NCBI RefSeq assembly: GCF_030144855.1
Contig: NC_082715.1
Location: forward strand, 129,828,001-129,892,000
Direction: 5' to 3'
DNA: 64,000 nt
DNA from: Hypanus sabinus
Lineage: Eukaryota
Position numbers and translations under genes: made by a program. Of this stretch, positions 2,420 through 62,489 are shown piece by piece; position 1 is the stretch's first letter, and the number at the start of each line of letters is the position of its first letter. The notes under the pieces are model-generated. The model worked only from the letters and a program-made list of their open reading frames with translations. It did no database searches and had not been told where the DNA came from.

Positions 2420-3745
2420 TTAAAAGTCTTTTCTAAATTTGGAGCCTAGAAGGCCATTTTTGTAGTGCCACAGAGGTAAGGTTGGAATACACTGAGTACT
2501 GGCACATATCAGAACAATGAGACATTGGCGCATCTTTGGTAGTCTGAGCAAAGAATTGCAGGGGGAGAGGAATGTGATATTAGGAAGGTTAGCCATGTTT
2601 AAAATAAAACAGCCACTAAAACTGGATGGGAAAACTTGACATTCCAGAGGGAATTAGGGATGAAGACTTCAGAAGGGCTTGCCATATTGGTCCAAACCTT
2701 TCTAAAGAGAAGGATGCTGTCATCCTTGATTAAAAAGGCTTGAATGATGAAAGGATAATCAGTTTAACAGCAACGGGAAGCTGTTTTGGAGAGCTGACTT
2801 AGATTAGTTAAAAACAAATTGCTCGAGCAATCTGACACAATTTTTGAGAAGGTATTACAGGCAGCTGGTGAAAAGAACATAGTGCCAATCATCTATGGTA
2901 ATTTTTGAAAGCATTTCACGAAGTCTCACTTAAAAGGGTGGTAAACAAATTGAAACAATAATAGGACTATGAAGACACACAAAAAGAAATTCAAGGTATG
3001 TTGTAATTCAGTCAGGAAAAGTCACTGATAGTCACTAATCTTCCCAAGGATTTAGTGTGGCTTTATACTTAGAGTAAAATTTCCAAGTTTGCGGATTATA
3101 TCAAAGTAGGAGAGAAGAATGAATGCAGAGAAGGGCGAAGTGATACATTTTGGCAGAAAGGAAAATAAGAGATAATATAAATTAAATAATATGATTTAAA
3201 ATATGAGAAGTGTGCAGGAACAGGCAAAACTACATGTAAATGTGCATAAATCTTTGAAAACACAATGACACTCTGAGAAGGAAGTTTGTAAAGTAATTGA
3301 GATGTTGGCTCCATAAATAGACTTGGAGCACAAAAACAGAGGTGTCATGTTGAACTTTTATAAAACATTGATTCAAACACAGATAGAAGACAGCATCCAA
3401 TTTTCATTGTGGCATTAAAAGTTAATGTGAGGATTCTGGAAAGAGTACAGAAGAGATTTACTGAACTGACTTCAAGCTTGGAGAATCAATTGAAAAGATT
3501 AATCTGAAGAAGCCTGGGCTGATTTCTTTGGAGTAGAGTTTAAAAGGTGAACAAAATCATGATAGGGTGAGAGACAGTAGCGGGCAGCTGTTTCTACTAA
3601 GAAATAGCTAGAAGAAAGTTTCATTTTAAATGCATGGTAGTTATCATCCACAACTCACTTGCTGTAAGCATGGCAGAAACTGAGACAATTGGGGCTTGCA
3701 AAACTAAATTGGAACAACACATTGGAAAATTATTTTCTGTTGAGA
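2420..3745 (+). mobile_element. Older, heavily decayed CR1 remnant
   Basis: Patchy similarity to the CR1 RT and 3' region (aaaatttccaagtttgcggat, agagtacagaagagatttac). Confidence 0.5.
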
Positions 3746-11371: not shown

Positions 11372-11781
11372 TATCTCATAGTGCCAGGGATCTGAGTTCA
11401 GTGCTAACCTCAGGTTCCTTCTGTGTTGAGTTTGTATGTTTTTCTGGTTCTGTTCCGGTGCTGGTTTTGCATCTCAATTTCCAAAAATCTGCTGGTTGGT
11501 AGGTTAATTAGCTGTTGTAAATTACTCAGCTATTACCCAACGTACTAGAGTGGTAAAAATCAAGAAGGTGAAGAGAATGTGGGGAGGATAAAGTAAATGG
11601 TATAAATCTAAGATTACTGTAAATGGGTGGCTTACTGGTTGTCATGGACTCAGTGGCCTGTTTCTGTGTTGTATCTATCTGCAGCACAGTTTCTATACAA
11701 TATAAAACAAAAAGGATAAAAAATTCAAATCTTAAAGAAAGAGGAGGTGTAGACCTACAATATTGCAATCTGAAAGGGTAC

Positions 11782-11921
11782 CTTAGTATGTCCAGCCCAT
11801 ACGTGCATCTGCTTCTTAGGGAGGTAACACTTCTCTGGTGGTTGATCAGATCGTAAATTGACTCCAAGGTCCTGAGGAATGTGCAAATATGATCTGCCTT
11901 GATAGTCATACATATCTTTGA
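11782..11921 (-). CDS. CDC40: CDC40 internal exon (exon 7 equivalent), runs into first WD40 repeat
   Basis: tctttacag|TC AAA ... ACT AAG|gtaccc; 140 nt, phase 1->0; (I)KDMYDYQGRSYLHIPQDLGVNLRSDQPPEKCYLPKKQMHVWAGHTK; the next expected exon (GVSAVRLFP...) was not found in 1-11781. Confidence 0.96.
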
Positions 11922-13827
11922 CTGTAAAGAGAAAACAATCCTGCTTAGTGCTTTATAGAACTATTTCAGGTTCTTCACGAGGCAAGCAATAAAGGTAAGT
12001 ACTTTTTAAAATTCTAGTCATTGAAAGAATTCCCTTAAAAATCATATTAATTTACAACCATAAAAATTGGAATGTGAATTGGAACACAAATGTGAAAATG
12101 AAAACAAAAAGCTCTTGGAGAGATTTAATTTCGTCAATTAAACTTGCATCTTAAGTATGATCTGGCTCATCAATATAAAAAGTGGAACTACAAATCTGGA
12201 ATAATTGTTTAATATATGCTAGTTTATATTCCTTCCATGCCAAATACATTCTCAGAAAGTCATTTTGCCTTCAGTGCTTTATTTTTTTGCATAGTGAAGT
12301 GCAAATGTCCCATTTCTTGTCGCTGAACAAGCATCTCAGACTCAATTTTTCATTACTTTGCAGAAATTGTTCTCATAATAAATCAAATAAAGCACGAGGG
12401 CTAGTTTTAAAAATGTCAGTAAGTGCTAAGTGCACCAGCTCTGCAAGTTGTTTCTCAATATTTCCAAATGCAAATCAGATGTCACCAAGTGTGTCAGATT
12501 TATAAATTTATGAATCGTTACTCCAACTGCAGGCAGATAGGTGTCAGTCTACCTTGGAAATTAATAGCTATACTTCTTTGAAACTGAATTTTCAGTGCTG
12601 GTCCTCACTTTGACAACATTTTGATAATTCCAAGATTTATGCTACTTGACTCTAGCACATGATTCATGCCTAAACTTAGTATGTTAATAATCAATCTCAC
12701 CAGCAAAACATTTCCTTTATTTGTAAGTGTAATATGCAGAAATATCCAAATGTTAAATTACTTTGGTCCCAATTCAGATTCGAATGACTGCGGGGAACAG
12801 CAACGTGAAGATAAATTGAAGAGGAAATGCTAAAATAAAAATAAATAATAGCAGGAAATAAATGAAAGAAAATTTTTTATTATTTAATGGAGTAGCATCC
12901 CCTATGTTTTTACATTAATATCCTCTTTGTTTTGGCAGCAACTGCTTTTTTACAGATCCCACTACAGCTCTTCAATTTTACTATCTGATGTGGTGTTTTT
13001 AATTCTATTGAATGAGTCACAGGTAAGACACATCTGATGGTTAGTTTTTAAGGTTTCTTGCTCACATTTACTTCTCTGCTCAATTTCTTCTGCTTCTAGC
13101 TCTGTAAAAAACATACTCCCTCAAATTATTACTAATACTCTACAATTTTCTTTTTCTTCCTTTTCCAACTACAGACCTACATAATCATACTCTAATCCTT
13201 ATCTATATTGCACTTATTCTTTTCACATAAATAGGCGTGCAGAGAGTTAACTCTTCCCTTAAATCCAATTTCATAATGAATAATAGGGTCTTATTTAACG
13301 ATAAGAATGTCCTGCAAAGGAAATCCGCATATTGTCTCCAAATTGAGATCATCCGATTATTTGTATTGTGTCGCAGGACTCTTTAACACACCAATGTAAA
13401 CACCCCAGTAAAGCTAGGTGCAGCTCTGATCTCCAGTTTCTCTTTTCTCACTTCATACCTGCTCAGAATTCAGCTCTACCTCACAACCAACTTTCTTGGG
13501 CACACCAATGCAAGTGATATTTTAGGGAACTTGTCACAAAACTCTATGGCTTTAACTTAAGTGAAAATTCACAACTGCATAACAGGTATCAAAATTAAGA
13601 AATGAGAAAGTTTGAGAATAAGGAATACCAGACAGGAAGCAAGCAGAGACAGTAAGTGATATAACAAGTACTAAACAAAACAAAGAAAGCAAAATACTTT
13701 AGACTGCTGTTAATTTGTAGCTGGTGTAAAATAAGATGAAAAATTAAATCAAATCCTCCTTTGCAAAGGATCAGAATTGTTACCCTCTATGCGGAACAGC
13801 AAACAAACAAAATTAAGGTTTTATTAC

Positions 13828-55260: not shown

Positions 55261-56544
55261 TTCTTTGTTACATCTAGAACTTCCTGTCCCGTGATTAGGC
55301 TAGGATTAAATTGGGGGATTGTTGGGTAGTGTGGTTCAAAGGGCCAGAAGGGCCTACTCCACGCTGTATCGCAATAAAAATAAATAAATAAATCCCAGCT
55401 AGCTTCTTATTCTCCACACTCTATAAAATCAAACTCATCCAAAATTAGAATTATATCTTGCTGTTCCATTATTTTAGAGCTCCAGCATTGTCAGCTGTGC
55501 CTTATATCCAACAATTCCCTCCTCTAACTTCTTTGTACTTCCACCTGCACCACACCACTCTGATCTGTGATTCTCATGCAATGCAGTTTTGAATTATGCT
55601 TACGTGAACACCTCGGGTGACTTAGTCTGCTAAAGATTCTATTTAAATGCAAGTTTCCATTGCTCTTTATAAAATATAAACTTTGAAGTCTCACTTATGG
55701 TCTGCATCTGGTGACCCTTTTTCAACCCATTTACAATCTAGTTTATAAAAATAATTTACAGGTGTAAACTAAGGTGAAAAATAGGTTCAAAATGGGGGGG
55801 GGGGTGTTTGGGACTCGATGATCTTGTTGCGCTTGTGCAATTTATTTTTTGTACGGGGGAGGTCTGGGGATTGATGTTCTTGTTGTCGTTTGCGCGGTTT
55901 ATTTTTATTGTGGGGGCGATAGGGTTTGATGTTCCCTTTGCTCTTTGCACAATTTGTTTTTTTGCATGGGAGTGTTTGGGTTGATGTTCTTGCTGCAGTT
56001 TGTGCAATTTGGGTTTTTTTTGTGCAGGGGGAGTTTGGTGTTTTTCTTTGAATGGCTTCTATTATTTTCTTTGTTTTGGGACTGTCTGGAGAAGACGAAT
56101 CTCAGAGTTGTATACTGCATACATACTTCAATAATAAATGTACCTTGCACTTTGAACCATATATACCCTGCAGAATTACAGGTTATTTCAAACTAATAAT
56201 TCCAGCAACCAAGGTGACTTTATACAAAGAACTAAGCTCAGCTGAGGTTTTTGTTCTCATTTGGTATTAATTAATTAATGTCACAGATTTCACTACTGTT
56301 AAATACTGAATGCTTATAAAAGTAGTCACAGAAGATTCAAGTCTTTAGGGATATGGATCTATATTAAGTATAATTGAAAAGATGAATGCTGTAGTTGGAT
56401 GAAATTTGAAATAAAAACAGAAAATACTGGACTATTCAGTTGATCAGGCAAATACATAAAAAATATGGCATGAACAACAGTCGAATAAAATGTCATTGAT
56501 AGCCTCTTCTAATAACATAATATGAAGAGTCAGTTGGAGCTTAC

Positions 56545-56674
56545 CATAGGTGTGAAAGGTCCTTCTTTGCTCCTCAAACCTGAAGTCATTAATATGGGCA
56601 GGTTCAGCATATCCAGACAGCATATTTCTAGGGGCAGCCATCTGCTGTGTCTTGAAAGGGTTCACTGGTCCAAA
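56545..56674 (-). CDS. CDC40: Pre-mRNA-processing factor 17 (CDC40/PRP17), internal exon (human exon 3 equivalent)
   Basis: ttttcag|TTT GGA ... ACC TAT G|gtaagc; 130 nt, phase 0->1; encodes FGPVNPFKTQQMAAPRNMLSGYAEPAHINDFRFEEQRRTFHTY, nearly identical to the recalled human FGPENPFRTQQMAAPRNMLSGYAEPAHINDFMFEQQRRTFATY. Confidence 0.96.
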
Positions 56675-57644
56675 CTGAAAACATATTATGTACTTGCGAT
56701 TAATTGTTCTGACTCAAAATACATAGCCTTTTATTCTAGTCACTGCTCTGTAATTTCAATAATAAGCCATGTCATTTACTTAATAATTATACTAAAATAT
56801 TTATGTTGAAGTGTAAACTGAACATGAACTGTTAAATTAGGACAAGAAAACCGTTTAGTTAAAATGTATTTCTGTGAATAAAGCAAAAAAATGTTCAGCA
56901 ACTCCTTTCCAAGAAACTGAATTAAAAGAAAACAAGCTCATTAGAATTTTGCAGCATCATATTGTTATTCAACTATCCATTAACTACAGGACAGTGTTAG
57001 AAACATAGCTATCAAAAGCTTTTCAGTCTAGTTCCAAAATAATGTTGCAGCGGTATTAAGGGGAAAAATGGCTCCTCTCAAGTAGAATTCTTAAACTATT
57101 CTCAAGTGTAAGAAGAAAGTGAAAATAAGAGGGAAAAAGAATACTTGAACCTTCTTTGAACTATTTCCAGAAGAAGTGTATCCCTCGTTAAACAACAGTG
57201 ACCAAAGTTATATGCAGTACCTCAGGTGTAATCTCACCAGTGCTTGGTACGGTTGTAGAAGGCTTCTTTTGCATAAACTCACATGAATTACTTTCCCAAT
57301 TACTTATTCATTCCGATAGTCTATCTTTCATATTAGTGGCACTTAGTTTCCTCTTAACCCCAGCAATCTGTAGTCTCTTTCTAGTTACGAAATATCCTGC
57401 TCTTTTTTCTTCATCCAGTAAATTACTATAAAATCAAGAGACATGGGGAGTGTATGAACGTGGTACTGAGGCCAAGACCAGTACAGCCACAACAAAACAC
57501 GTACAGTAAATTTGAAGTCTGAATGAGCTACACTTGTTCCCTATATTTTTATCTTATTTTCCCACAGAAGCAGATAAGCACACATTTCACGCATTAACTT
57601 ACATCACTGAGCAAAGTTTTTGCATCATCCCCACAATTTATCTT

Positions 57645-60600: not shown

Positions 60601-61112
60601 AGGCCTCCAGTTAGAGAGACAACCATCTACTACTATTCTCTGGCTTCTTCCGCAAAGCCAATGGTGAATCCAGTGGACTGCTTCATCGGGACTTTCTCTA
60701 AGGCCTTGCTGAATCCATGTAGACAACATCTATCATCTCTTCTTCAACAACCTTCTTGGTAACCTCCTCAAAATCTCTGTAAGATTTATTAGATGTGACC
60801 TGTCACACACCAAGTCATGTTGACTATCCTTAGTCAGGTCTTTTCTAATACCTTCCAAAAATTTACCCAAGACTGTTGTAAGGCTCACCAACCTAAAATT
60901 TCCCAGCTAGCTCAGAGCCTTTCTTAAACAGCAGAACATTAGCTATCCTCCAATCTAGTGGTCACCAACCTTTTTAAGCCCAAGATCCCTTACTTCGGCC
61001 TTAGTGAAAGGCAAGATCGACCCTAAATTGGTTAGTCACATGCATGCGCACTGGGCAGAAAAGACTGAAAGTAAAACCCCGCAACCCGGAAGTAGACATA
61101 ATGTATGTACAC

Positions 61113-62032
61113 TAGGGGTCACCACCTTTTTTTGCACTGCGGACCGGATTAATATTGACAATATTCTTGCGGATGGGCCAACAGGGGGGCGGGGGAGGTG
61201 GTGATGTTAAACACGGAATACAGCGATACTCGAAGCAGGTTCCCCATGTCCAGTCTATTCTGCAATGTAGTTTATGTGGCTCTCAGCACTTAGCTTCTGT
61301 CCCGCTTGCTCACGTTTTTTCCACTGAAAAAACTCAGTGGATTTGTCTTTAAGTGCAGGATGCTTGGATTCAAGGTACCGAAGCAGTTTTGAGGGCTTCA
61401 TTGCCTCATCAGACAGCCTCCGGGACCGAACTCCAGCTTCCCGCCCGCGGCTAGTCGTGGGTGGGGTGAGAGCACAAGGTAAGGGCCTGAGGTCCCCGTG
61501 TCGGGGCCACGGCGGTCGCAGTCCGGACAGAGCAAGCGAGCAACCAAGTGAGGAGTGTGTCAGGGCACGCCACCCGCCCTCCTTGTAGGTAGGTAGGATC
61601 TATTGGCCAACAAATTTTGACCCGAGGGATGACTTGCAGTAGATCGCAGCGAGGTAGCTGCTCTGCTACTTATGAAACCCTGAGCCCAAATTAGGTCGTC
61701 CGCAAATATTTTAGCACCGGGTTCCCCACGAACATTCGGTGTACTAAATAGGTTTAGAGGTGGCACCCATCTGTCTGTGCTCCAGGCCAGTAGCAACGGC
61801 ACTTCTTGCTGGCCACGTGAGGTGGCTGGTTACCTGAGGCCAACCAGTGATCCCTGGTGCGAGGGCATCACTGCGTTTAAGCAACAAATGACCTTACATG
61901 GATAATGACCTCATGTGAATTCAAGTTCAACAGTGGGCATGACAGGGAATGAGGAAAGGTGCTGCTGACTCATATTGTTTCATATCGCCAAATCATATCG
62001 TTTCCTCGCGGCCCGGTGTTTGGGGACCACTG
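61113..62032 (-). mobile_element. Internally deleted Charlie/Buster-type hAT transposon nested in the MITE, carrying captured rDNA
   Basis: TIRs taggggtcacca / tggggaccactg; 8-bp TSD atgtacac/aagtacac (7/8); minus-strand transposase remnant LSDEAMKPSKLLRYLESKHPALKDKSTEFFQWKKREQAGQK at 61294-61416 and C-terminal-like RLDMGNLLRVSL near 61220-61260. Confidence 0.87.
61609..61881 (-). rRNA. 28S rRNA 3'-terminal fragment (non-functional, captured)
   Basis: Minus strand reads TTCGTGGGGAACCCGGTGCTAAAATATTTGCGGACGACCTAATTTGGGCTCAGGGTTTCATAAGTAGCAGAGCAGCTACCTCGCTGCGATCTACTGCAAGTCATCCCTCGGGTCAAAATTTGTT, recognisable as the conserved 3' end of animal 28S rRNA. Confidence 0.88.
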
Positions 62033-62489
62033 AAGTACACTGTAGTGCATGGCGGGGGGGGGGGGCTACACACATGCACACTGGGCAGAAAGGATGGAAC
62101 TAAAACACCACAACCCGGAAACAATCTCTCAAATGTATTTGTGTATTTCTTTTTTGGGATCTACTGGGAAAGTCTCAAAGATCAACCAGTCGATCGCAAC
62201 TGACGGGTTGGTGACCACGACTCCAATCCTCCCGCACCTCACCTTAAGGATGTTTTAAATATCTCTGTGAGGGTCTCTGCACTTTCTCCCCCAAGGTCCG
62301 AGGGAACATCTCATCAGGCCCTGGGGATTTATCCACTAATTTTCCTCAAGATAGCAAGCACTTCTTCTTCAATAATACAGATATAATCCATGACTATTCT
62401 TTTACCCCCAAGTGTGACCTGACCATTATCATGTAACATGACCTCCCAACCCTTGCACAATTCCTGAGGAAATAGAGGCATTGGTGAGT

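What the first reader, a model, noticed from the sequence alone, without database searches (positions are those of the whole stretch)
61113..62032. hAT DNA transposon that has captured the 3' end of 28S rRNA plus probable 3' ETS
Seen: between TIRs with an 8-bp TSD, the minus strand reads 5' subterminal region, about 270 nt of 28S 3' end (61609-61881), about 190 nt of GC/CpG-rich sequence directly after the mature rRNA end (61417-61608), a BED-region transposase remnant (AMKPSKLLRYLESKHP) and a C-terminal-like remnant. There is no poly(A) or TSD around the rRNA piece. Established: Pack-type gene capture is well known for plant MULE/CACTA elements, and retroposed 28S-derived SINE28 is known in mammals. 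Inference: rDNA including 3' ETS was copied into a Charlie/Buster hAT during gap repair and may have been amplified by cut-and-paste, giving a 'Pack-hAT' rRNA family. The fragment is sense to CDC40, so it would be present in the pre-mRNA. Whether the rDNA came from the host or from another organism cannot be decided by eye.
Basis: partly seen in the sequence, partly recalled or inferred. Interest (0 to 1): 0.8.

Follow-up and report, generated by a model that had tools for sequence, protein, structure and literature searches.

The report
hAT transposon family carrying host rDNA
A cut-and-paste (hAT) transposon remnant in this vertebrate genome picked up about 540 bases of the host's own ribosomal DNA (the end of 28S plus the spacer after it) once, and then spread to well over 1,600 sites. 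It is a clear but mechanistically ordinary case of cargo capture that scatters rRNA look-alikes through the genome.

Summary
Window 61610-61882 (minus strand) is the last ~273 nt of 28S. Window 61416-61609 continues without a break into the host's own 3' ETS. Both were shown by alignment to rDNA units found in this assembly.

The rDNA piece is a family feature, not a one-off. All 30 copies examined share both junctions. The two junction 33-mers occur 1,881 and 1,634 times genome-wide (reversed-pattern control 0). Standalone copies have different 8-bp target-site duplications.

Transposase-coding Buster-type hAT relatives in the same genome share the ends and the coding remnants but lack the rDNA. 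In the short element the rDNA replaces the 5' UTR and about 66 codons, with 2-4 nt microhomology at the junctions. This fits filler-DNA capture during gap repair.

The founder rDNA is 96.7% identical to modern host rDNA in both the 28S and ETS parts, so the source was the host lineage.

One correction: the window copy did not insert by its own ends. It sits inside a second hAT-type MITE (60956-62220, perfect TSD CTCCAATC), and that composite amplified (at least 1,122 copies).

It lies in CDC40 intron 2, in sense orientation.

An earlier scan lead was verified: an unrelated TA-duplicating transposon here carries ITS2 plus the 28S 5' end.

Verdict: new member of a known kind.

The parts
60948..60955 (.). 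Target-site duplication (CTCCAATC) of the composite element, left copy
   Evidence: Perfect 8/8 match with 62221-62228. Other composite copies have their own different 8-bp duplications.
60956..61104 (-). Arm of the outer hAT-type MITE that hosts the rDNA-bearing element (terminal repeat TAGTGGTCACCAACC...)
   Evidence: Shared at 77-92% identity by 11 other loci that have the same inner/outer junction. The junction 33-mer occurs 1,122 times genome-wide.
61105..61112 (.). Inherited 8-bp duplication (ATGTACAC) from the original insertion of the inner element into the outer MITE
   Evidence: The same flank is present in the other composite copies.
61113..61215 (-). 3' terminal inverted repeat and subterminal region of the inner hAT element
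   Evidence: Aligns to the 3' ends of all family copies and of the transposase-coding relatives L039-L046.
61216..61275 (-). Remnant of the transposase C-terminal region. About 330 bp more is kept in the 1.1-1.3 kb variants and deleted here.
   Evidence: Element positions 760-813 align to the 3' coding region of L039-L046. The L011 remnant, residues 49-89, matches the last ~40 residues of hAT transposases.
61276..61415 (-). Remnant of the transposase N-terminal zinc-finger region (...EAMKPSKLLRYLESKHPALKDK...)
   Evidence: Translation. 87-92% nucleotide identity to the N-terminal coding part of L039-L046. phmmer matches to residues ~70-125 of hAT transposases.
61416..61609 (-). Segment derived from the host rDNA 3' external transcribed spacer (+1 to about +265 of the modern unit; shorter here through indels)
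   Evidence: Contiguous alignment to rDNA loci L031-L034 past the mature 28S end. Family majority versus rDNA: 203/210 aligned positions identical.
61610..61882 (-). Segment derived from the last ~275 nt of host 28S rRNA, including an expansion segment
   Evidence: Rfam LSU match. Alignment to host 28S, whose 3' end was fixed by Rfam on L031. Family majority versus rDNA 266/275.
61883..62032 (-). 5' terminal inverted repeat and subterminal repeats of the inner hAT element. It has a 24-bp deletion typical of the composite subfamily.
   Evidence: Alignment of 30 copies. Matches the 5' ends of L041, L043, L045 and L046.
62033..62040 (.). Inherited 8-bp duplication (AAGTACAC), partner of 61105-61112
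62041..62220 (-). Other arm of the outer hAT-type MITE
   Evidence: Shared with the other composite copies at 78-84% identity.
62221..62228 (.). Target-site duplication (CTCCAATC) of the composite element, right copy

Best explanation
This is one copy of a high-copy, non-autonomous hAT (Buster-like) transposon family. The family's founder was an internally deleted element.

In the founder, the 5' UTR and about the first 66 codons of the transposase gene were replaced by about 540 bp copied from the host's own 45S rDNA: the last ~275 nt of 28S plus the first ~265 nt of the 3' ETS. The most likely route is abortive gap repair after excision, with the repair strand switching to an rDNA template and back at sites of 2-4 nt microhomology (filler DNA).

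The founder kept both terminal and subterminal regions. It was therefore moved in trans by the family's transposase and reached at least 1,600-1,900 recognisable copies, with the rDNA piece as passive cargo.

One copy landed in a 345-bp hAT-type MITE. That nested composite was then mobilised by the outer ends and gave more than half of today's copies, including the window copy in CDC40 intron 2.

Shown: the anatomy, the rDNA origin, the shared junctions, the independent insertions, the absence of rDNA from coding relatives, and the composite.

Inferred: the repair mechanism, mobilisation in trans, and the neutrality of the cargo.
For: - Family size. 4,526 first-look candidates; 30 loci at 78-83% identity, many covering the whole element.
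- Same rDNA start. It falls at rDNA position -275/-272 in all 30 copies, and the same 3' junction is seen.
- Junction 33-mers genome-wide with up to 3 mismatches: 1,881 (5') and 1,634 (3'), reversed-pattern control 0.
- Independent insertions. Standalone copies carry different 8-bp duplications, 6 perfect and 5 at 7/8, of the nTnnnnAn type.
- Host rDNA. Arrays with 18-21 kb period. The unit is annotated 18S, 5.8S, 28S by Rfam. The 28S 3' end was fixed on L031.
- Contiguous 28S/ETS alignment. Founder-like majority versus modern rDNA: 266/275 and 203/210.
- Coding relatives. L039-L046 share the 5' end, the N-terminal piece and the 3' ~480 bp at 82-92% identity, and have nothing matching the rDNA part.
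- Breakpoints. Parental ...CATCAGTCG|GTCATTAAC... against element ...CATCAGTCG|CCTAAACGC....
- The parental configuration of that site occurs 211 times, against 1,881 for the rDNA junction.
- Composite. Identical inner/outer junctions in 12 of 30 loci, each with its own outer TSD. The junction occurs 1,122 times.
Against: - The repair mechanism is inferred from anatomy alone. Two to four nt of microhomology is weak evidence.
- A pre-rRNA template cannot be excluded, because the captured ETS part may lie inside the primary transcript.
- Copy numbers come from pattern matches, not a curated annotation.
- The 30 copies studied were chosen by similarity to the window copy, so they over-represent its subfamily.
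- The 28S part diverges slightly less from the family majority than the other parts (4.8% against 6.7-9.0% at non-CpG sites), and one copy (L004) was overwritten by modern rDNA. The cargo may therefore not be entirely inert.
- Dfam and Repbase could not be consulted, so the family may already be catalogued.
Confidence: 0.82

Rival explanations
1. The rRNA piece entered through RNA. A pre-rRNA (or a read-through transcript) served as template for repair of the excision gap, or a reverse-transcribed pre-rRNA fragment was ligated into the break.
For: The piece is a single colinear stretch in rRNA sense that starts inside 28S and ends in the transcribed spacer. It has the same orientation as the transposase gene. 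A second family in this genome also carries a stretch across a processing boundary, ITS2/28S. Both captured stretches are plausibly within the primary transcript.
Against: There is no poly(A), no target-site duplication around the piece, and no sign of LINE-type integration. The sequence does not distinguish a DNA template from a pre-rRNA template. The end at about +265 shows no obvious relation to a termination site. Repeated terminator-like motifs sit near +775 and +835, but that reading is a recollection, not a test.
Confidence: 0.1
2. The rDNA cargo is not passive. It helped the family spread or is kept by exchange with the rDNA arrays, for example through nucleolar or open-chromatin association, or homology-driven conversion as proposed for Pokey in Daphnia.
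For: The rDNA-bearing junction is about 9 times commoner than the parental configuration of the same site. Copy L004 has a 28S part that is 222/223 identical to modern rDNA at non-CpG sites, while its ETS part is as decayed as in other copies. The 28S part shows somewhat lower divergence than the rest. An unrelated transposon family in this genome also carries rDNA.
Against: Short deletion derivatives routinely outnumber autonomous elements whatever they carry. Only 1 of 30 copies shows conversion. CpG decay in the rDNA part (about 23-27%) is the same as in the transposon parts. The window copy has decayed to 82% identity.
Confidence: 0.1
3. The rDNA came from another organism: the family arrived by horizontal transfer already carrying foreign rDNA.
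For: hAT elements are known for horizontal transfer (general knowledge). Six non-CpG differences, fixed in the family, separate its 28S expansion segment from modern host 28S.
Against: The ETS, which evolves fast, is 96.7% identical to the host ETS over 210 aligned positions and differs mainly by 13 short indels. The conserved 28S core is identical to the host's. A 51-nt string taken from the family alignment matches the host arrays with 0 mismatches. Coding relatives of the family are abundant in the same genome.
Confidence: 0.04
4. A one-off event: an rRNA pseudogene or rDNA fragment landed in this particular hAT copy only.
For: None after testing.
Against: All 30 related loci carry the piece with the same junctions. 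There are 1,634-1,881 junction matches genome-wide.
Confidence: 0.01

Closest known systems
Pack-type (transduplicating) non-autonomous DNA transposons: Pack-MULE, Pack-CACTA, and filler-DNA-bearing Ac/Ds-type hAT deletion derivatives
   Same: A non-autonomous element with intact ends and TSDs carries a fragment of host DNA between the ends. The fragment was acquired once and then amplified with the element. The breakpoints show short microhomology.
   Different: The cargo is not a protein-coding gene fragment. It is 45S rDNA across the 28S/3' ETS boundary. The host is a vertebrate, the superfamily is hAT (Buster-like), and the copy number is in the thousands.
Pokey / mPok (piggyBac) of Daphnia (PMC3849761; listed in Table 2 of PMC10946416)
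   Same: A DNA transposon whose internal non-coding part holds sequence derived from the host rDNA spacers (IGS and ITS2), with evidence of exchange with the rDNA.
   Different: Pokey inserts at a specific site in 28S, and the autonomous element itself carries the rDNA-derived repeats. Here no element sequence is found in the rDNA unit, only the deletion derivative carries the rDNA, the piece includes mature 28S sequence, and exchange with rDNA was seen in 1 of 30 copies.
SINE28 of mammals (Longo et al. 2015, as cited in PMC10946416)
   Same: Dispersed repeats that contain 28S rRNA-derived sequence.
   Different: SINE28 is a retroposed element. This family has TIRs, 8-bp TSDs and no poly(A). 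It contains spacer sequence beyond the mature rRNA end, so it is not a copy of mature rRNA.
The second rDNA-bearing family of this same genome (about 1,035 bp, TA duplication, ends CAGGTCGACCTTCACTAATCC...)
   Same: A non-autonomous DNA transposon that carries a host rDNA stretch across a spacer/28S boundary.
   Different: It has unrelated ends and a TA duplication (Tc1/mariner or pogo type). It carries a different rDNA part (end of ITS2 plus the first 178 nt of 28S) and has far fewer copies.

Membership tests
hAT superfamily | 8-bp target-site duplication | tested here: met
   Standalone copies: 6 perfect and 5 at 7/8, all different (TTTTAAAC, GTCTTATG, CCATAATG, TTTTAAGA and others). The composite in the window has CTCCAATC, 8/8.
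hAT superfamily | Short terminal inverted repeats starting (C/T)AG | tested here: met
   CAGTGGTCCCCAACC... and ...GGTTGGTGACCCCTG are conserved across 30 copies.
hAT superfamily | Transposase with the hAT C-terminal dimerisation region | tested here: met
   The remnant ORF matches 580-640-aa proteins at their N-terminal region and their last ~40 residues. P0007 and P0096 pass Pfam PF05699. Loci in this genome that code for such proteins share the element's ends.
hAT, Buster clade | Transposase groups with Buster / ZBED5 / SCAND3-type proteins | tested here: inconclusive
One hit (P0005) has the SCAN + Znf_SCAND3 + Dimer_Tnp_hAT architecture. No tree was built.
Pack-type (cargo-carrying) non-autonomous DNA transposon | Host-derived fragment lies between intact ends, is absent from the autonomous relative, and is shared by independently inserted copies | tested here: met
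Retroposed rRNA copy (SINE28-like or processed pseudogene) | Poly(A) or LINE-type tail and a target duplication around the rRNA piece; limited to mature rRNA | tested here: not met
   No A-run and no duplication at the junctions. The piece continues about 265 nt past the mature 28S end.
rDNA-specific DNA transposon (Pokey-like) | Copies inserted at a fixed site within the rDNA unit | tested here: not met
   A complete 18,007-bp unit shows no homology to the element outside the captured stretch. Only one unit was examined.
Functional 28S rRNA gene | Full-length LSU model match above Rfam's gathering score | tested here: not met
   Only model positions 3297-3399 match, 39.9 bits against a gathering score of 50. 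The true host 28S scores 2,900 bits.

The most novel reading that the evidence does not exclude
In this lineage the rDNA arrays are a preferred donor, and a continuing exchange partner, for DNA transposons. Two unrelated superfamilies each captured a stretch across a 28S/spacer boundary. At least one dispersed copy was later overwritten by modern rDNA. On this reading the thousands of dispersed 28S/ETS copies are not inert: they would act as ectopic recombination or conversion partners of the nucleolar organiser, or the cargo would have helped the family spread.
Probability: 0.12. Interest if true: 0.7.

Novelty: new member of a known kind. Interest (0 to 1): 0.45.

Why it matters
- Rarity. 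In the 2024 review of rDNA-transposon interplay (PMC10946416, Table 2), the only listed transposable elements with 45S-derived parts are Pokey/mPok (spacer repeats) and SINE28. A vertebrate hAT family with 28S plus 3' ETS, in thousands of copies, adds a clear third case.
- Recurrence. Together with the second family found here, it shows that rDNA capture can recur within one genome.
- Practical consequences. More than 1,600 dispersed 28S 3'-end look-alikes will be labelled as rRNA fragments or pseudogenes by repeat and RNA annotation. They will attract rRNA reads in RNA-seq (many sit in introns, as here in CDC40). They can also distort rDNA copy-number estimates or FISH with 28S 3' probes.
- A dated record of the spacer. 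The family preserves a snapshot of the spacer. Compared with it, the modern ETS is 96.7% identical but 66 nt longer, through 13 indels all in one direction.
- The nested composite that out-amplified its parts is a tidy example of how MITE families are renewed.

Tried and rejected
- Rfam at gathering threshold on the whole window found nothing. The rRNA match appears only with the E-value threshold. The weak ZEB2_AS1_3 match at 61118-61207 (E 1.8) is chance.
- A search of the own genome with Rfam family RF02543 failed four times because the machine was busy or unreachable. The rDNA was found instead with a 51-nt pattern read from the family alignment.
- A DNA search with the ITS2/28S 5' junction returned only rDNA arrays among the 40 scored candidates. 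A pattern search was needed to find the dispersed second family.
- Sequencing-run look-up and read laying. Organism names are coded and all material was short contigs. This shows only that runs under four different organism labels hold thousands of family contigs, including the hAT/28S junction. It gives no dating and no evidence on expression. No RNA run held the stretch.
- The idea that the homology to 28S extends upstream of -275 was rejected. The apparent similarity there is a tandemly repeated subterminal motif that is also present in the coding relatives.
- Literature searches found no description of this family.

Full report
**What is at the coordinates**

On the minus strand, window 62032 to 61113 reads as follows:
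- a hAT-type end (CAGTGGTCCCC...) and subterminal region;
- a stretch that Rfam aligns to the last 103 positions of eukaryotic LSU rRNA (61611-61713, 39.9 bits, E 1e-7, below the gathering score);
- a GC-rich stretch;
- an open remnant that translates to ...LSDEAMKPSKLLRYLESKHPALKDK...;
- the second end (...GGTGACCCCTA).

Eight-base near-repeats flank it: ATGTACAC and AAGTACAC. The description is therefore accurate.

**Is it a family?**

A search of the window's own 4.04-Gb assembly gave 4,526 first-look candidates. It returned 30 loci at 78-83% identity, many covering the element end to end. In a MAFFT alignment every copy carries the rRNA-like and GC-rich parts. Some copies are 1.1-1.3 kb because they keep about 330 bp that the window copy has lost.

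**Host rDNA**

The Rfam-family search of the genome could not be run. A 51-nt string that is invariant in most family copies was used as a pattern instead. It matched 673 places. These include tandem arrays with 18-21 kb spacing on contigs C283, C285, C388 and at C17:345-421 kb, with 0 mismatches.

One unit was annotated by Rfam as 18S (1,731 bits), 5.8S and 28S (2,900 bits, full length). These are real 45S units. Rfam fixes the mature 28S 3' end on L031.

**The rDNA piece**

The window element aligns to these units from element position 151 to 576 at 82% identity. The alignment starts 274-275 nt before the 28S end and runs without a break into the spacer.
- All 30 copies begin at the same rDNA position, within 4 nt.
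- The longest copies reach about +265 of the spacer. There all copies switch to the same transposon sequence, TGTCTAATGAGGCAATGAAGCCC.
- In window coordinates, 28S is 61610-61882 and the ETS is 61416-61609.

**Counting and independence**

| 33-mer (up to 3 mismatches) | Matches genome-wide | Reversed-pattern control |
|---|---|---|
| 5' junction (transposon/28S) | 1,881 | 0 |
| 3' junction (ETS/transposon) | 1,634 | 0 |

The matches are spread over all large contigs.

Standalone copies have different 8-bp duplications: TTTTAAAC, GTCTTATG, CCATAATG, TTTTAAGA, TGGTAAGG, CTTTAGAA and others. Six are perfect and five match at 7/8. The capture happened once and the product transposed many times.

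**The parent**

The open remnant of copy L011 (90 codons) was searched against 1.84 billion protein representatives.
- Proteins of 580-640 aa match it twice: at residues ~70-125 and at their last ~40 residues.
- Three of them carry or nearly carry Pfam Dimer_Tnp_hAT. One is a SCAND3/ZBED9-like protein.
- One such protein used against the own genome found many loci, three with uninterrupted frames of 631-658 aa.
- Eight fetched loci share the family's N-terminal coding piece and about 480 bp of 3' sequence at 82-92% nucleotide identity, and most of them also share its 5' end. None has anything matching the rDNA part.

Alignment of four of them shows what the rDNA replaced: the 5' UTR, the start codon and about 66 codons, up to just after the CxxC of the zinc finger.

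The breakpoints are:
- 5' side: parental ...CATCAGTCG|GTCATTAAC against element ...CATCAGTCG|CCTAAACGC, while rDNA reads ...AATCCCG|CCTAAACGC, sharing CG.
- 3' side: a similar 2-4 nt overlap.

A second deletion removed the transposase core.

This is the anatomy expected from interrupted gap repair with a template switch (filler DNA). The mechanism itself is inferred. The parental version of the 5' site occurs 211 times, against 1,881 for the rDNA version.

**Source of the rDNA**

The majority state of 29 copies (L004 left out) was computed inside a script for statistics only. It is identical to modern rDNA at 266 of 275 28S positions and at 203 of 210 aligned ETS positions.
- The modern ETS has 66 extra bases in 13 indels, all in the same direction.
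- The six non-CpG 28S differences all lie in the expansion segment, -253 to -204.

Because the ETS evolves quickly, this points to the host lineage (or a very close relative) as donor, some time ago.

Copies differ from the rDNA by a median 3.6% at non-CpG sites in the conserved 28S core. About a quarter of CpG positions have changed. Decay is similar in the rDNA and transposon parts. The one complete rDNA unit examined holds no other element sequence.

**The window copy is a nested composite**

Twelve of the 30 loci share the same sequence outside the inner element's ends. Aligning those flanks shows a 345-bp hAT-type MITE split by the inner element. It has its own ends (TAGTGGTCGCCAACC... 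and ...GGTTGGTGACCACTA) and a different 8-bp duplication at each locus.

In the window the composite is 60956-62220, flanked by a perfect CTCCAATC. The inner/outer junction 33-mer occurs 1,122 times. More than half of the rDNA-bearing copies therefore spread as this composite.

**Gene context**

Open stretches on the minus strand match human PRP17/CDC40:
- residues 90-137 at 56447-56713 (E 1e-21);
- residues 240-290 at 11758-11952 (E 3e-26).

The exon for ...LDPFLKEVTFNPLYETMFAPE lies 6.3 kb beyond the window's end, and exon 1 lies further on. These two exons were recognised only by motif matching, not confirmed with a search tool.

The composite therefore lies in intron 2, with the rRNA-sense strand the same as the gene's. 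Its presence in the pre-mRNA follows from that position. No RNA evidence was obtained.

**Other organisms**

Contigs of four runs under four different coded organism labels held thousands of pieces of the family at 90-99% identity. Some show the transposon/28S junction as loose ends. The differences listed there are mostly T>C and A>G relative to the window. This fits CpG decay in the window copy. Nothing more can be concluded from coded names and short contigs.

**A second capture in the same genome**

Two earlier, unchecked notes of this scan mentioned another transposon with the 28S 5' end.
- A 40-nt pattern from the start of host 28S matched 346 places, including isolated chromosomal sites.
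- Seven such loci carry the last 40-150 nt of ITS2 plus the first 178 nt of 28S, at 80-93% identity to the modern unit.
- The rDNA sits inside a shared element of about 1,035 bp with ends CAGGTCGACCTTCACTAATCC... and a TA duplication.

This family is unrelated to the hAT family. rDNA capture has therefore happened at least twice here.

**Comparison with what is known**

The 2024 review of rDNA and transposable elements lists, for 45S-derived parts in TEs, only Pokey/mPok (spacer repeats in a piggyBac element) and SINE28. Pokey's repeats exchange sequence with the rDNA.

The present family works like a Pack-type or filler-DNA derivative and resembles Pokey in its cargo. It differs from Pokey in three ways:
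- it is not rDNA-targeted;
- only the deletion derivative carries the rDNA;
- it shows one clear conversion among 30 copies (L004).

It is not a retroposed rRNA copy: it has no poly(A), and spacer sequence is included.

**Verdict**

It is a new member of a known kind. Interest is moderate, raised somewhat by the copy number, the spacer fossil and the second independent capture.

Noticed in passing
L053:1089-2127 and L059-L064 (for example G000:C1:92402288): An unrelated transposon family of about 1,035 bp, with a TA duplication and ends CAGGTCGACCTTCACTAATCC..., carries the last 40-150 nt of ITS2 plus the first 178 nt of host 28S (80-93% identity to the modern unit).
   Followed up: partly
L004 (G000:C38:79595138-79596065): The 28S part of this composite copy is almost identical to modern rDNA: 1/223 non-CpG and 2/50 CpG differences. 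This includes sites where 25-29 of the 30 copies share family-specific bases. Its ETS part is as decayed as in other copies. It looks like a gene-conversion tract from the rDNA arrays.
   Followed up: partly
L039, L040, L042 (G000:C37:63440691-63442502, C38:62909433-62911214, C24:138785587-138787365): Buster-like hAT transposase reading frames of 631-658 aa without stops, 39-45% identical to P0007. L039 lacks a match to the family's 5' end. Whether they are active elements or domesticated genes was not examined.
   Followed up: no
window 60883-60955 and 62229-62346: The composite itself sits inside a further high-copy repeat. Many contigs from four runs join about 60955 to about 62245 with roughly 20 other letters between, and contig depth in these flanks runs into the thousands in places.
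   Followed up: no
L036 / rDNA unit, spacer +1 to +265: All 13 indels between the family's ETS and the modern ETS go one way: the modern spacer is 66 nt longer. Either the spacer grew after the capture or the founder copied a shorter variant.
   Followed up: no
rDNA unit, spacer about +775 and +835: Two copies of a motif GGTTAAC(C/G)AGTTGCCCCGCCCGGACTTGG lie downstream of 28S. They may be Pol I terminator repeats (a recollection of the Xenopus GACTTGC box, not tested).
   Followed up: no
G000 contigs C283, C285, C388, C488, C17:345-425 kb: The rDNA arrays differ in unit length (18-25 kb). They differ by up to 5% in the ITS2/28S 5' region, so rDNA is not fully homogenised between arrays.
   Followed up: no
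window 61883-62032 versus standalone copies: Composite-type copies share a 24-bp deletion in the inner 5' end, between two ACCGGGCCGC repeats. This is a handy marker of the subfamily.
   Followed up: partly
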